Part shown: one piece after another, positions 5,270-16,292 of the stretch
Layout of the letters: each line of letters opens with the position of its first letter
Numbering within the stretch: position 1 is the stretch's first letter
Assembly (NCBI RefSeq): GCF_902459465.1
Contig: NC_047074.1
Span: 8,494,001-8,558,000, forward strand
DNA: 64,000 nucleotides
DNA from: Asterias rubens
Lineage: Eukaryota
Direction of reading: 5' to 3'
The notes under the pieces: generated by a model
What the model was told of the DNA's origin: nothing
The model's database searches: none
What the model saw: only the letters and a program-made list of their open reading frames with translations
Made by a program: the position numbers and the translations under genes

Positions 5270-5612
5270 ATGTACGGAGGGACTGGTTATGGAAACCCCG
5301 GTCACCATCAGCAACGCTTGATGTCACGGGGGCCTGGCCCACAGATGGCACCGATGGGCCCGGGCCCTCAGGTCCGTCGACCGCTCCGTTACCTGCCCCC
5401 TGAACCCCGTGGATATGCGGAGTTTCCTGCTATCTATATGGGGTCTGTTCCCCTTGGGGCTGGGAATGGCGGCGGGGATCCAAGTTTTGAAGATGTAGCC
5501 CGCGTTGTGTCGTTTCTCCGAGACAGGACCGAAGACTTCAGGAGGAATGGTACACGTCTCAAGATGTATGTGATGGAAGTGGGCTGTGATAGAGTGTCTT
5601 TCAAACAACCTG
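5270..5612 (+). CDS. PTB/PID-domain gene, alternative first coding exon A (N-terminal half of the PTB domain)
   Basis: ATG at 5270, Gly/Pro-rich leader, then FPAIYMGSVPL...VARVVSFLRDR...YVMEVGCDRVSF. Ends at a phase-1 GTAAGT donor at 5613 and splices in frame to 14799. Confidence 0.75.
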
Positions 5613-5659
5613 GTAAGTTAGCAAGAAAATTACACCAAATGCTATAAAGTATACCATGT

Positions 5660-5900
5660 GTGGAAAAGTTTCCGTATGGCGCCACCACTTTTTCATTCGA
5701 AATAAAATAATATAGTATCTAATTTACCTGATTGATATATCCCTTTTTGTAAAAATGAGTGAAAAGGTGGTGGCGCCATACGGAAAGTTATCCCCATGGG
5801 TATTTATTCATCCATGGTTTAACCATGGAGGAATAAAGTATACCATGTGATATGGTTTAACCATGGAGGAATAAAGTATACCATGTGATATTCCTCCATG
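5660..5900. repeat. Short inverted-repeat element followed by a tandem duplication of about 39 bp
   Basis: tttccgtatggcgccacc at about 5667 is inverted as ggtggcgccatacggaaa at about 5770. catggtttaaccatggaggaataaagtataccatgtgata occurs twice. Confidence 0.55.
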
Positions 5901-12889: not shown

Positions 12890-15800
12890 ATGGGTGACCA
12901 GGTCTACTATGTGAGACAAACTGGGACCATGGGACGAGGAAGAGGACGGGGAGGAGGTCGTCGTTCAATGTCTCGGTCCCCGACTCGTATGGCTATGAGT
13001 CAGAATGGCCGTAACACCGTAAGACGCAAAGGCGGTCCGCATGCACGGGGAAGAAGCAGTTCGAACGGCCCGGGAGGCAGCCGTCAAAAGACCTTTTCCC
13101 GGCTGATCTTCCTCGGTGCTTCCAAAATGAGGAGTGGCGAGCCAGGTGTGCAGGAGTTGTCACAACTGGTAGAGGAGATCCGAGGGCGCGCTAAGGCGTA
13201 TAAAGAGCGAGGTGTCGCCATACCTTTCTACGCCATGAATATCACCGAGAAACAGGTGTCTTTTATGGAAGTCCGTAAGTTTGTAGTGCTCTAATCATAA
13301 TCACCACAAATCCGTCAAATCATCGCGAACACTAAACCCTCGATAGCGTTAAATATCGCAGGCCCGTATAATTGCTCGTTCGTTTTTGAAAGAGCAAGGG
13401 CACTGAGGCATCCTTTGTAAAGGGCACCCTATGAGGAAAATTGTAAATTATTTTCTACTTGAGCATTTTCATCAAGGCAATTACTAGAGGCATCGGGGCA
13501 ATTGCATCCAATGCCTCCGTGAAGTATCAGACCTAATATCGCCAATCTCTCCGGATAACATGCAACCAATGTTCTGCTTCATGAGTACTAAATATTAAAT
13601 CAACCCGAATCCACTTTTCGTTCACTGTAAAGGTTGAAAAGGTTTCTCTGCCAGCCCTATACAATGTAGTTGATGACTGGGCCCAATTTCATAGAGCTGC
13701 TAAGCACAACAATTTGCTTAGCATGAAATTTCTTCCTTGATAAAAACAGGATTACCAACCAAATTTTCACGTGATTTTCAGGATAAGCAAAGAACAGCTA
13801 AATACCAGTAACACGCAATATGCAACAAATGGAAATTTGGTTGGTAATCTTGTTTTTATCAAGGAAGAAATTTCATGCTAAGCAAATTTGTTTGCTTAGC
13901 AGCTCTATGAAATTGGGCCCAGATTAAATTGACCAACTTATTCTGTAGTTCATCTTGTTATAATGCTTGTATTTTAAAACCCACTCCCACATTGTGCTCA
14001 ATGTGTGAACTTGACGAGACGAACAAAGGCGCGCATAAGTTACAATTTTGATTACCAGTCAAAGAGCACGTACACGGACCAAAGGCCGAAGCCGTGAAAC
14101 TGTTCTTCCATCCCGTATAGTTGGGAATGCAGTTTCGATACATTTGGTTTCTCAATGTGTTAATGAGTTTATAGTTCAGTTACTTATTCACCTGGTATTT
14201 ATTTTGTAAAAACTAGTTTTCGTTTAGAGCTTGTGGTTGGATTTGATGTCAAATTAATACGTCTACAAAATATAGTTGGGCCTAAAGTTAGTCAGACTTT
14301 TTACTTCAGAGTTTCTTGCGTTCGTGTTTGGTTGTTGTAATATGCTGCTGCTGTTCTTTAACAAATGCTGCTGTTGCTGACTTTCTTTTTGCCTCCAAAT
14401 GAAGGAAATGTTACGGCATAAACCGGGCCCAATTTCACAAAGCTGCTTTTTGCACTGCGCGATTTCCACTTCATAGCGATGCACACGAAAAGGTATGTTA
14501 ACCTTACGTAAAGTGCACGAACATGAATGACGTCACAATGCAAATCCATGTGAACGTGTCAGATGGCCGCCCAGTTGACACCTTAGCAAATTTGTCTGCT
14601 ACAGTAAGCACGAACAATTTGCCTTCCGTAAAGCAGCGCTACAAATTGGGCCCTGGTTTTAATTAAGGTTCTCGTCGGCCGAAGCTCTCAGTCTCAATCT
14701 GACACTTTATACTGGAGTTTGAAACTTCTTGAAAAGTGCCTAGTTTAGACGACAAAGTACCAATCACTGACTCCTTTCCCCTGTCCTATCTTTGACAGAG
14801 ACGAGAGATGTTCAGCACATCCCAATAAATCTGATCCATTTCGTCGCTGCCGACCCGCGTCATAGCAACATCTTCTCCATGGTGGCCAGAGGTAAAGGGA
14901 ACCGTTTCGTGTGCCACGTCTTCGAGTGTAACACCCCGAGGCAGTGCGGGGTCATCACGTCCACCCTGTCCGAGGCGTTCCGTGTCGGGTATGAGAACTG
15001 GATCCATGTGGAGGAGAACCAACGCAGATTGGCCGAGAGGAGGGAAATGGACATGGGAGGACTTGGTAAGTTTAGGATTAGTGGAAATGGACATGGGAGG
15101 ACTTAGTAAGTTTAGGATTAGTGGGATGGACATGGGAGGACTTGATAAGTTTATGAATAGTTGAAAAGGACATGGGAGGACTTGGTAAGTTTAGATTAGT
15201 GGGAATTGACATAATAATTATGGGATGACTTGGTAGGATAAGTGGGAATGGACATGGGTGAACTTGGTAAAGTTTATGAATAGTTGAAAAGGACATGGGA
15301 GGACATGCTAAGTTTATGAGGGATTGACATTGGATAAAGTAGGACTTTTACAAGTTTGGGAATGGGGTTTAAAATTGGTAGTCGGGCTTAGACATATAGG
15401 AGGGCTTGGGAAAATTGATGATAATGATACTACATCCTGAAAGGTTTTGAAGTTTTGAAAAATTATTAATGGTGGCCAAATTTTCAGAAAAATTACATCA
15501 AACTGATTTTTAATTTGTTTTCCCACTACATTAGTTATGAAATCAAGACCATTTGTATTATTATTATTTTGTGTTTGCAATACTTTCAGTAATAAATATT
15601 TCTCAAAACAATCGGAACTGAAGAAAACAAGCAAGCTTCATTTCCCCCCAAAATACTTTATTTAAATGTTACATTATTACCATGCAGTAAGATTAGATAT
15701 GTTGTCCATATAGACCTAAGGTTTGGATGCTGTATTAAAAATTATATGCTTTTTGAGGTTGAACAAAGAATTGACTAGAGTGGGATTCGAACGAACGACC

Positions 15801-16292
15801 TCCGGATTAACGTGCCGGCTCTCTACCAATTGAGCTATCTAGCCCATGTTGGTGGTGTCCCTAGTTTGTCAATATCTTTGTTTGGGGGTGCCCAAAATTA
15901 AAAGCAAATGAAATCTTACAGAACACTTGATCAAAATCAAATGTTGATAAAATGTTAATTTTTCTCTTAAAGACTATTTTCAAGAATGGGACGACCACGC
16001 CCCACATGGCACGCCAGTCGTCAACATCGTCGAACGCTACAACAGGGGCATCTCTTGTCCAAGAAACTTCGTGAGGCCCCAAGACGAGTTACCTGTCCTC
16101 CCGGACCGCCTCATCGTCACCCAGGGCGGCCGAGAGGTCAATGGAGAACCCTCATCCATGAGGTACTCGTTCGAGGATGAAGAAGAGGAGTTTGATGACT
16201 ACCCGGTGGAAGAGGTCTACGTTAGGTCTGGTGGTGGGGGGCGTCGCCGGAACCAGCCTGTTGTCTACGACGTACGCCCTGACTGGGACTAA
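12890..16292 (+). CDS. PTB/PID-domain adaptor protein, isoform with first exon B (319 aa); exons 12890-13274, 14799-15065, 15985-16292
   Basis: Canonical splice sites; exon lengths 385+267+308 = 960 nt keep frame. PTB motifs IFLGA, IPINLIHFVAAD, FVCHVFEC and ITSTLSEAF, with an acidic Tyr-containing C-terminal tail ending in TAA. Confidence 0.85.
13680..13919. mobile_element. Harbinger-like MITE (family H, complete)
   Basis: TIRs ggcccaatttcatagagctgctaagca / tgcttagcagctctatgaaattgggcc, flanked by CTG and CAG. Confidence 0.75.
14426..14652. mobile_element. Harbinger-like MITE (relative of family H)
   Basis: ggcccaatttcac...aaattgggcc termini, flanked by ccg and ctg. Confidence 0.6.
15047..15330 (+). 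repeat. Minisatellite of about 40 bp spanning an exon end and its 5' splice site
   Basis: Unit atggacatgggaggacttggtaagtttaggattagtggaa, about 7 degenerate copies; the first two begin at 15047 and 15087. Confidence 0.85.
15773..15846 (-). pseudogene. tRNA-like element with a GTT (Asn) anticodon loop; probably a SINE head or tRNA pseudogene
   Basis: The reverse complement gggctagatagctcaattggtagagagccggcacgttaatccggaggtcgttcgttcgaatcccactctagtc has A-box and B-box motifs and an anticodon arm. The acceptor stem is imperfect. Confidence 0.55.

What the first reader, a model, noticed from the sequence alone, without database searches (positions are those of the whole stretch)
5270..16292. PTB domain split between two interchangeable paralogous first exons and one shared exon
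Seen: exon A (5270-5612) and exon B (12890-13274) each start with ATG and carry a different low-complexity leader, Pro/Gly-rich in A and Arg/Gly-rich in B. Both then encode homologous PTB N-halves (IYMGS/IFLGA, VARVVSFLRDR/LSQLVEEIRGR, YVMEVGCDRVSF/YAMNITEKQVSF) and end in phase-1 GTAAGT donors at equivalent positions. I found only one PTB C-half exon (14799-15065), and both first exons join it in frame. Inference: this is a variable-first-exon plus constant-exon layout, as in UGT1A or clustered protocadherins, but here it builds two versions of a single folded domain. More variable exons could lie outside the window.
Basis: partly seen in the sequence, partly recalled or inferred. Interest (0 to 1): 0.75.

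Follow-up and report, generated by a model that had tools for sequence, protein, structure and literature searches.

The report
Two swappable first exons, one PTB domain
A sea-star adaptor gene makes two proteins by joining either of two distantly related first coding exons to the same downstream exon, so a single PTB domain gets two different front halves; this is real and conserved across sea stars, but it is already annotated as isoforms X1/X2 and belongs to a known class of duplicated-exon swaps.

Summary
The window is Asterias rubens LR699104.1, and the locus is RefSeq LOC117298816.

**Layout**
- Exon A (5270-5612) and exon B (12890-13274) each start at ATG and end in a phase-1 GTAAGT donor.
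- Each encodes a disordered leader plus PTB strands β1, α1, β2 and β3.
- Exon C (14799-15065) is the only PTB C-half in the 64 kb (β4-β7 and the C-terminal helix).
- The last exon is 15973-16292.

**Support for both isoforms**
- RefSeq already lists A+C+last (isoform X2, 309 aa) and B+C+last (isoform X1, 323 aa).
- The same isoform pair exists in Patiria miniata and Acanthaster planci.
- A-type and B-type N-halves are about 22% identical but homologous (hhalign 89-91%). Each is the other's only match in the window.
- AlphaFold2 folds both isoforms into complete PTB domains (pLDDT 83 and 85). Foldseek matches ARH and GULP1 at TM 0.83-0.85.
- In two RNA assemblies, the exon B contig stops 30 nt past its donor. 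The exon C contig starts exactly at 14799 and is 3.7-5.8 times deeper, so a second spliced input exists. Exon A is present in both runs.

**Limits**
I did not read the A-to-C junction directly. Exon A's own start site is untested.

**Verdict**
This is a new member of a known kind (N-terminal tandem-duplicated exon substitution), and no third variable exon was found. Moderate-to-low interest.

The parts
5270..5612 (+). Variable coding exon A. It holds an ATG, a Pro/Gly/Gln-rich leader (about 48 aa), the PTB N-half (β1, α1, β2, β3) and a phase-1 donor G|GTAAGT. It is the first coding exon of RefSeq isoform X2 (309 aa).
   Evidence: Searches give the sequence and translation. P0001 is 100% identical. 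The exon is conserved in Patiria, Acanthaster and an ENA contig species. RNA assemblies X1 and X2 hold 0.83 of its 31-mers. Whether a non-coding exon lies upstream is untested.
12717..13274 (+). Variable first exon B. The 5' UTR starts at or before 12717 and the ATG is at 12890. It encodes an Arg/Gly/Ser-rich basic leader (about 66 aa) and the PTB N-half, and ends in a phase-1 donor C|GTAAGT. It is the first exon of RefSeq isoform X1 (323 aa).
   Evidence: Searches give the sequence and translation. P0038 matches. RNA contigs X1 record 4 (12717-13274) and X2 record 14 (12836-13274) start without overhang and end 30 nt past the donor. The spliced copy L002 joins 13274 to 14799.
14799..15065 (+). 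Constant exon C. It encodes the PTB C-half (β4-β7 and the start of the C-terminal helix), in phase 1 at both ends, and is shared by both isoforms.
   Evidence: Searches give the sequence and translation. Pfam PID E 3.8e-9. RNA contigs begin exactly at 14799 at depth 132 and 85.6, against 35.8 and 14.8 for exon B. It is the only C-half in the window.
15973..16292 (+). Constant last coding exon. It encodes an acidic, disordered tail of 106 codons (the first completed by the last base of exon C) and ends in stop TAA at 16290-16292. The 3' UTR continues to at least about 20511.
   Evidence: One search gives the sequence. It matches P0001 and P0038 residues after GGL. L002 is collinear from 15972 to 20511.
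15043..15316 (+). A 40-bp tandem array of 6.8 copies. It starts inside exon C and repeats the exon's last 23 nt plus its donor site, leaving decoy donors in the last intron.
   Evidence: Tandem Repeats Finder; sequence.

Best explanation
LOC117298816 of Asterias rubens is a small cytoplasmic PTB adaptor gene of the Dab/ARH/GULP-like class. Its first coding exon exists in two copies that diverged long ago.

Splicing logic (inferred, by analogy with UGT1A and protocadherin clusters):
- A transcript that starts at exon A splices the 5612 donor to the first available acceptor, at 14799.
- It skips exon B because exon B, being a first exon, has no acceptor in use.
- A transcript that starts at exon B's own promoter (at or before 12717) splices 13274 to 14799.
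- Isoform choice is therefore set by promoter choice.

Protein consequences:
- The constant part is β4-β7, the C-terminal helix and the acidic tail. In solved PTB domains, β5 and the C-terminal helix form the NPxY/F peptide groove.
- The variable part is β1-α1-β2-β3 plus a disordered leader.
- The A form has a Pro/Gly-rich leader and a near-neutral N-half.
- The B form has a strongly basic RG/RS-rich leader (+11 to +16) and a more basic N-half.
- Most likely the two proteins keep the same core peptide groove but differ in membrane or lipid affinity, secondary partners, localisation and expression.

Shown: the exon structure, the homology of the two exons, their conservation, the predicted foldability of both forms, and transcription of both exons.

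Inferred: promoter-driven exclusivity and the functional difference.

Origin: most likely a tandem exon duplication before the crown sea-star radiation.
For: - Gene models: RefSeq isoforms X2 (A+C+last) and X1 (B+C+last) in A. rubens, with matching X1/X2 pairs in Patiria miniata and Acanthaster planci. The shared C-terminal 194-201 residues are 100% identical within each species.
- Homology of A and B: hhalign 89-91%, score about 35. Reciprocal HMM hits within the window. A versus B scores higher than either does against LDLRAP1-like outgroup N-halves (27.0 and 13.4).
- Constraint: between Asterias and the two valvatid species, the A PTB N-half is 51-56% identical and the B PTB N-half 54-57%, against 72-77% for exon C. 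The phase-1 GTAAG donor of A is conserved in the ENA species, as seen in the read-through of P0043.
- Fold: AlphaFold2 pLDDT is 83.0 for A and 84.8 for B, with the same secondary-structure order and the exon border between β3 and β4. Foldseek matches GULP1, ARH, AIDA-1 and Dab PTB domains at TMt about 0.8-0.85. Pfam PID is above the cut-off for all six proteins.
- RNA, presence: exons A and B are both in RNA assemblies X1 and X2 (word shares 0.78-0.90). Unique intron bins have zero depth, so these runs are RNA and not DNA.
- RNA, topology: B contigs end exactly 30 nt (k-1) beyond 13274. C contigs start exactly at 14799 and are 3.7-5.8 times deeper than B contigs. A second spliced input into 14799 must therefore exist, and it is the major one.
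- Junctions: L002, an intronless copy from another asteroid, joins 13274|14799 and 15065|15973 exactly.
- Charge and composition differences between the A and B forms.
Against: - The 5612|14799 junction was not seen directly. The single read-laying run could not span both exons, and the raw RNA reads of the sister species had almost no depth on this gene (at most 1.7). A-to-C therefore rests on RefSeq models, on elimination and on contig depth.
- Exon A's start site is unknown. A polypyrimidine-AG at about 5237 could be an acceptor. In that case A would be an internal exon behind a non-coding exon, though still exclusive with B.
- The functional difference between the isoforms is inference only. 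No binding, localisation or expression data exist.
- AlphaFold2 used an alignment that mixes A-type and B-type rows. High confidence for both forms is therefore not fully independent.
Confidence: 0.85

Rival explanations
1. Exon A is a relic. It would be the leftover first exon of a dead tandem gene copy, and the A+C isoform would be a gene-prediction artefact or non-productive transcript. Only B+C would make protein.
For: The A-to-C junction was not read directly. A faint C-half-like stretch lies between A and B on the minus strand, at 12565-12639 (HMM E 0.0035). It could be debris of a lost copy.
Against: The exon A open reading frame, its PTB residues and its phase-1 donor are conserved in at least four sea-star species. 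The folded part is better conserved than the leader. Exon A 31-mers are in two RNA assemblies that lack intron signal. The C contig is 3.7-5.8 times deeper than the B contig, so the non-B input is the major one. RefSeq models the A form in three species, and it folds with confidence.
Confidence: 0.05
2. A and B are mutually exclusive internal exons behind a shared upstream non-coding exon and promoter. The choice would be made by the splicing machinery (for example competing RNA structures or steric hindrance) and not by promoter use.
For: A possible acceptor (tttcttatttcctcacctgAG) lies about 32 nt before the ATG of exon A. Long palindromes sit near exon A's donor (5662-5793) and upstream of B (11882-11988). 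Exon A's 5' end was not observed.
Against: Exon B contigs in two RNA assemblies run colinear with the genome to 12717 and 12836 and start there without any unaligned upstream letters. They run through the candidate acceptor at about 12831. Exon B therefore behaves as a first exon. The palindromes are covered by reads on both strands in a sister species, like dispersed repeats.
Confidence: 0.08
3. The layout arose from a tandem whole-gene duplication and not from an exon duplication. The upstream copy would have lost its own C-half and tail, and now borrows those of the downstream copy.
For: The acorn worm Glandiceps has two tandem PTB genes of this broad type 7.3 kb apart. There is a weak C-half-like remnant between A and B. 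A and B each carry their own ATG and leader.
Against: The remnant is short (25 aa), on the wrong strand and marginal in significance. The hemichordate genes are intronless and only 26-30% identical, so orthology is unproven. The present-day structure and working are the same under either origin.
Confidence: 0.2

Closest known systems
N-terminal tandem-duplicated exon substitution events (Martinez-Gomez, Tress and colleagues; PMC9741552, PMC8373072)
   Same: Two neighbouring homologous coding exons are used one at a time, giving isoforms that are identical except for a homologous region. The event is ancient, conserved and in frame. In that paper, 40 of 236 human events swap N-terminal polypeptides.
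   Different: The swapped region here carries the start codon. For exon B at least, it also carries its own transcription start. The two copies are unusually divergent (about 22% identity). The swap replaces half of a compact β-sandwich, whereas that paper describes terminal events as mostly signal peptides, helices or disordered regions.
UGT1A and clustered protocadherin loci (variable first exons spliced to constant exons)
   Same: Each variable exon carries its own ATG and a 5' splice site that joins one common downstream acceptor. The downstream variable exon is skipped because it lacks an acceptor. Isoform choice by promoter follows from established knowledge of these loci.
   Different: There are only two variable exons, and none further in 64 kb. 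The variable exon encodes half a domain, whereas in those loci it encodes whole domains. Promoter choice is not demonstrated here for exon A.
Internal half-domain swaps by mutually exclusive exons (FGFR2 IIIb/IIIc Ig3 C-half; FYN exon 7A/7B kinase N-lobe, cited in PMC9741552)
   Same: Part of a single folded domain is replaced by a homologous alternative while the rest stays constant, which tunes specificity.
   Different: Those are internal exons chosen by splicing regulators. Here the swap is at the 5' end of the coding sequence and also changes the disordered leader.
Dab-like PTB adaptors: LDLRAP1/ARH, GULP1, Dab1/2, Numb
   Same: Pfam PID is above the cut-off. The predicted fold superposes on ARH (3so6) and GULP1 (6itu) at TM 0.83-0.85. 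RefSeq names isoform X1 'LDL receptor adapter protein 1-like'.
   Different: Identity to any solved PTB domain is only 15-25%. The tail lacks the ARH clathrin box and AP-2 motif. Close relatives were found only in sea stars, and the next hits are at E about 1e-6. It is not an ARH orthologue.

Membership tests
PTB/PID domain (Pfam PF00640) | Sequence match to the PID profile above Pfam's gathering score | tested here: met
   All six sea-star isoforms score 40-56 bits against a cut-off of 20.9. A-type isoforms cover profile positions 1-136 to 1-138 and B-type isoforms cover 55-136 to 55-138.
PTB/PID domain (Pfam PF00640) | PH-like seven-strand β-sandwich capped by a C-terminal helix | tested here: met
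   AlphaFold2 models of both isoforms show β1, α1, β2-β7 and a C-terminal helix, with pLDDT 83 and 85. Foldseek top hits are all PTB domains, with TMt up to 0.85. These are predictions, not solved structures.
PTB/PID domain (Pfam PF00640) | Binds NPxY/NPxF-type peptides, with or without phosphoinositides | not testable with these tools
   Needs binding assays.
LDLRAP1 (ARH) orthologue, as the RefSeq name suggests | Closest relative among PTB proteins is ARH | tested here: inconclusive
   The ARH PTB matches at E 1e-7, but GULP1 matches equally well at 6e-8. Identity is about 20-25%.
LDLRAP1 (ARH) orthologue, as the RefSeq name suggests | C-terminal clathrin box and AP-2 β2-appendage motif | tested here: not met
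   A regular-expression scan of all six isoforms finds neither motif. The motif definitions come from my own knowledge.
Tandem-duplicated exon substitution (N-terminal type) | The two alternative exons are adjacent and homologous to each other | tested here: met
   hhalign 89-91% over 60 columns. Reciprocal HMM hits, with each exon the other's only hit in the window. A and B are closer to each other than either is to the outgroups.
Tandem-duplicated exon substitution (N-terminal type) | Same splice phase and equivalent end point, so either exon keeps the frame | tested here: met
   Both end in phase 1, one residue before TRD of exon C.
Tandem-duplicated exon substitution (N-terminal type) | Used one at a time in mature RNA | tested here: inconclusive
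   RefSeq isoforms carry one exon or the other. B contigs have no upstream overhang. L002 carries B only. The A-to-C junction and the absence of A+B transcripts were not read directly.
Tandem-duplicated exon substitution (N-terminal type) | Conserved across species | tested here: met
   Both forms occur in Asterias, Patiria and Acanthaster. A further species has A-type and C exons on one contig.
Variable-first-exon array (UGT1A / clustered protocadherin type) | Each variable exon has its own promoter and start site | tested here: inconclusive
   Exon B contigs begin at 12717 and 12836, colinear with the genome. There are no data for exon A.
Variable-first-exon array (UGT1A / clustered protocadherin type) | Array of many variable exons | tested here: not met
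   HMMs of the N-halves find only A and B in 64 kb. RefSeq lists two protein isoforms per species. Sequence upstream of the window was not examined.
Variable-first-exon array (UGT1A / clustered protocadherin type) | All variable exons splice to one common acceptor | tested here: met
   Both isoform proteins continue at 14799. C contigs start exactly at 14799, which is the signature of a graph merge.

The most novel reading that the evidence does not exclude
One constant PTB C-half has for more than 200 million years been completed by either of two N-halves that share only about a fifth of their residues. This would be a natural case of split-domain complementation. It may have arisen when the upstream member of a tandem gene pair lost its own C-half and took over its neighbour's. 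The two forms would be targeted to different compartments: a basic RG/RS leader on one, a Pro/Gly leader on the other.
Probability: 0.2. Interest if true: 0.45.

Novelty: new member of a known kind. Interest (0 to 1): 0.3.

Why it matters
The locus is a clean, conserved example of how much sequence divergence one half of a small β-sandwich domain can absorb while still packing against an unchanged other half. That is useful for thinking about domain modularity and for protein-engineering comparisons. It also corrects a misleading database name: the gene is not an LDLRAP1 orthologue. It does not reveal a new mechanism. Homologous alternative 5' coding exons are a described class, and the two isoforms are already in RefSeq.

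Tried and rejected
- Own C-half for exon A: tblastn and profile HMM searches of all six frames found none on the + strand. The only other hit is a marginal 25-aa match on the minus strand at 12565-12639, which cannot serve exon A.
- Third variable exon: N-half HMMs found only A and B in the window.
- Pfam on the N-half exons alone gave no hits. The full isoforms were needed.
- Read laying: one call was allowed, with at most 6000 letters, so it could not span A to C. I chose 9100-15070. The output was dominated by intronic repeats. The sister-species raw reads had almost no depth on this gene, and the loose-end table was truncated, so the 30-nt overhang letters were not shown.
- Exact look-up of the A isoform in assemblies returned nothing on record, because only the longest product of a gene is indexed.
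- Searches with exon A and exon B alone, looking for RNA-contig fragments that carry the junction, found only genomic open reading frames (P0043, P0044).
- An exact search for the 25-nt A|C junction in metagenome contigs gave no match.
- Literature search for the three LOC identifiers gave no papers.
- Hemichordate relatives turned out to be intronless and too distant to date the duplication.
- CpG and GC profiles gave no usable promoter signal.
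Full report
**Identity of the locus.** L001, fetched through the isoform X1 protein, is identical to window 2270-19292. It comes from Asterias rubens LR699104.1 (GCA_902459465.3), so window base 1 is 8494001 of that record. The gene is RefSeq LOC117298816.

**Observation.**
- Exon A (5270-5612) is ATG plus 114 codons plus one base, followed by GTAAGT.
- Exon B (12890-13274) is ATG plus 128 codons plus one base, followed by GTAAGT.
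- Exon C (14799-15065) follows an AG acceptor and is in phase 1 at both ends. It matches Pfam PID positions 78-136 of 140 at E 3.8e-9.
- A last exon at 15973-16292 ends in TAA.
- tblastn and profile HMMs over all six frames of the 64 kb find one C-half only. They find no N-half other than A and B.

**Gene models.**
- An exhaustive HMMER search with exon C returned a 309-aa protein that is exactly A+C+last (P0001).
- A word-indexed search with P0001 returned the A. rubens isoforms X2 (P0001) and X1 (P0038, which is B+C+last, 323 aa, named 'LDL receptor adapter protein 1-like').
- The same search returned X1/X2 pairs of one gene each in Patiria miniata (LOC119723493) and Acanthaster planci (LOC110980984).
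- Within each species the two isoforms are 100% identical from TRD onward, over 194-201 residues.
- The layout is therefore already annotated. It is conserved between forcipulatid and valvatid sea stars. From general knowledge, that split is on the order of 200 million years old.
- A further species has an A-type exon (P0043, 78% identical in the folded part, with the GTAAG donor read through) and the C exon on the same strand of one 33.7-kb contig, in the same order.

**Are A and B homologous?**
- Alone, the two exons are about 24% identical (E 0.006).
- Profiles of three A-type and four B-type N-halves align at 89-91% probability over 60 collinear columns. The alignment ends at the donor.
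- The A-type HMM finds exon B at E 2e-5, and the B-type HMM finds exon A at E 0.028. Each is the other's only hit in the window.
- A versus B (score 35.8) beats A versus the LDLRAP1-like outgroups (27.0) and B versus the outgroups (13.4).
- This fits a duplication within this gene lineage, with A the more conservative copy.
- Across the seven sea-star N-halves, 6 columns are identical and 17 are conservatively similar, many at hydrophobic positions.

**Constraint.** Identities between Asterias and the two valvatids:

| Region | Identity |
|---|---|
| A PTB N-half | 51-56% |
| B PTB N-half | 54-57% |
| Exon C | 72-77% |
| Tail (last exon) | 61-63% |
| A and B leaders | 40-49% |

Both variable exons are maintained. 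They evolve faster than the constant half.

**Fold.**
- AlphaFold2 on P0001:41-225 and P0038:55-239, each with a 29-row alignment, gave pLDDT 83.0 and 84.8.
- Both models show the same element order: β1, α1, β2, β3 | β4, β5, β6, β7, C-terminal helix. The exon border lies between β3 and β4.
- Foldseek against the PDB returns only PTB domains at the top. ARH (3so6) has TMt 0.81 for A and 0.85 for B. GULP1 (6itu) has TMt 0.83 for both. AIDA-1, Dab1/2, Numb, APPL1 and X11 follow.
- By sequence, Pfam PID is above the cut-off for all six proteins. phmmer aligns the B form to the GULP1 PTB from β1 onward.
- The claim of two versions of one folded domain therefore holds at the level of prediction.

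**RNA evidence.**
- Exon A 31-mers (share 0.83) and exon B 31-mers (0.78-0.90) are both in two RNA assemblies of the same species, X1 and X2. At lower shares they are also in a sister species.
- B contigs cover 12717-13274 (X1) and 12836-13274 (X2). They start with no overhang and end with exactly 30 unlaid letters.
- C contigs start exactly at 14799, at depth 132 (X1) and 85.6 (X2), against 35.8 and 14.8 for B.
- In a k=31 assembly graph, this pattern marks two or more paths merging at 14799. The depth excess makes the non-B path the major one.
- The zero-depth intron rules out unspliced RNA as that path.
- Exon A is the only transcribed, phase-matching candidate, and it is the one RefSeq models. 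This is inference by elimination. The junction letters were not shown.
- The sister-species raw reads had almost no depth on the gene.
- L002, a 4.5-kb contig from another asteroid assembly, carries an intact intronless B+C+last copy. It joins 13274|14799 and 15065|15973 exactly and then follows the 3' UTR to about 20511. Whether it is a transcript or a retrocopy is undecided. Either way it records the spliced B form.

**How it most likely works.**
- Exon B behaves as a true first exon.
- By the logic established for UGT1A and protocadherin loci, a transcript that starts at A would splice its donor to the first acceptor, at 14799. It would skip B because B offers none.
- The constant half holds β5 and the C-terminal helix, which form the peptide groove in solved PTB domains.
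- The variable half holds β1-α1-β2-β3 and the leader.
- B leaders are strongly basic (+11 to +16; RGR/RGG repeats in Asterias and Arg/Ser-rich stretches in all three species), and the B N-half carries +1 to +4. A leaders are Pro/Gly-rich (+4 to +5), and the A N-half carries -3 to 0.
- I infer the same core peptide groove with different membrane or partner affinity and localisation. This is untested.

**Comparison with what is known.**
- Tandem-duplicated exon substitutions are a described class. In human, 40 of 236 events swap N-terminal regions (PMC9741552).
- Half-domain swaps are known for internal exons, for example FYN, as discussed in that paper.
- The case here is a new member of that class with unusually divergent copies.
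- It shares the layout logic of UGT1A and protocadherin loci, but not their arrays.
- It is not an ARH orthologue. Identity is about 20-25%, GULP1 matches equally well, and the tail has no clathrin box or AP-2 motif.
- No paper mentions the gene.
- Strong relatives occur only in sea stars. The next hits have E about 1e-6.
- One of those is an intronless hemichordate gene. It looks A-like at β1 and B-like at β2-β3, and it has a tandem paralogue. That is too distant to date the duplication.

**Verdict.** Novelty is modest: the isoforms are already annotated and the kind is known. Still open are the direct A-to-C junction, exon A's start site, and any functional difference between the isoforms.

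Noticed in passing
window 15043-15316: A 40-bp unit repeated 6.8 times begins inside exon C. It copies the exon's last 23 nt together with its donor (GGTAAGT, with later copies AGTAAGT and GATAAGT), leaving a row of decoy donors in the last intron.
   Followed up: partly
window 12565-12639, minus strand: A 25-residue stretch (IFSHFVRGQKNEFGCFVFD...) resembles β6-β7 of exon C (HMM E 0.0035, tblastn E 0.03). There is no RNA depth there. It could be chance or debris of a lost second C-half.
   Followed up: partly
window 15772-15844, minus strand: A tRNA-like element lies in the last intron. Rfam tRNA scores 38.8 bits against a gathering score of 29, yet ARAGORN calls no tRNA. It is probably a tRNA-derived repeat or a pseudogene.
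   Followed up: partly
window 5662-5793, 11882-11988, 19331-19497: Long, near-perfect palindromes match assorted miRNA models below their gathering scores, two of them on both strands. The one at 11882-11988 is read on both strands in a sister species, so they look like MITE-type repeats.
   Followed up: no
window 9100-9500, 10700-11300, 13300-14100, 14500-14700: Intronic segments with very high depth in RNA runs of two species and many variant copies. These are abundant, transcribed dispersed repeats.
   Followed up: no
L002 1-4543 (GCA_014845345.1 JACSEG010001597.1): Another asteroid assembly holds an intact, intronless copy of the B isoform with a long 3' UTR that is collinear with the window. 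The first 926 bases match nothing in the window. Whether it is transcript contamination or a retrocopy is undecided.
   Followed up: partly
L004 10001-10939 and 18267-19505 (Glandiceps talaboti OZ203282.1): Two tandem, intronless PTB (PID_2-type) genes lie 7.3 kb apart in an acorn worm. The first resembles the sea-star A exon at β1 (YMGSVP) and the B exon at β2-β3.
   Followed up: partly
window 16293 to about 20511: The PTB gene appears to have a 3' UTR of about 4 kb, judged from collinearity with the spliced copy L002.
   Followed up: no
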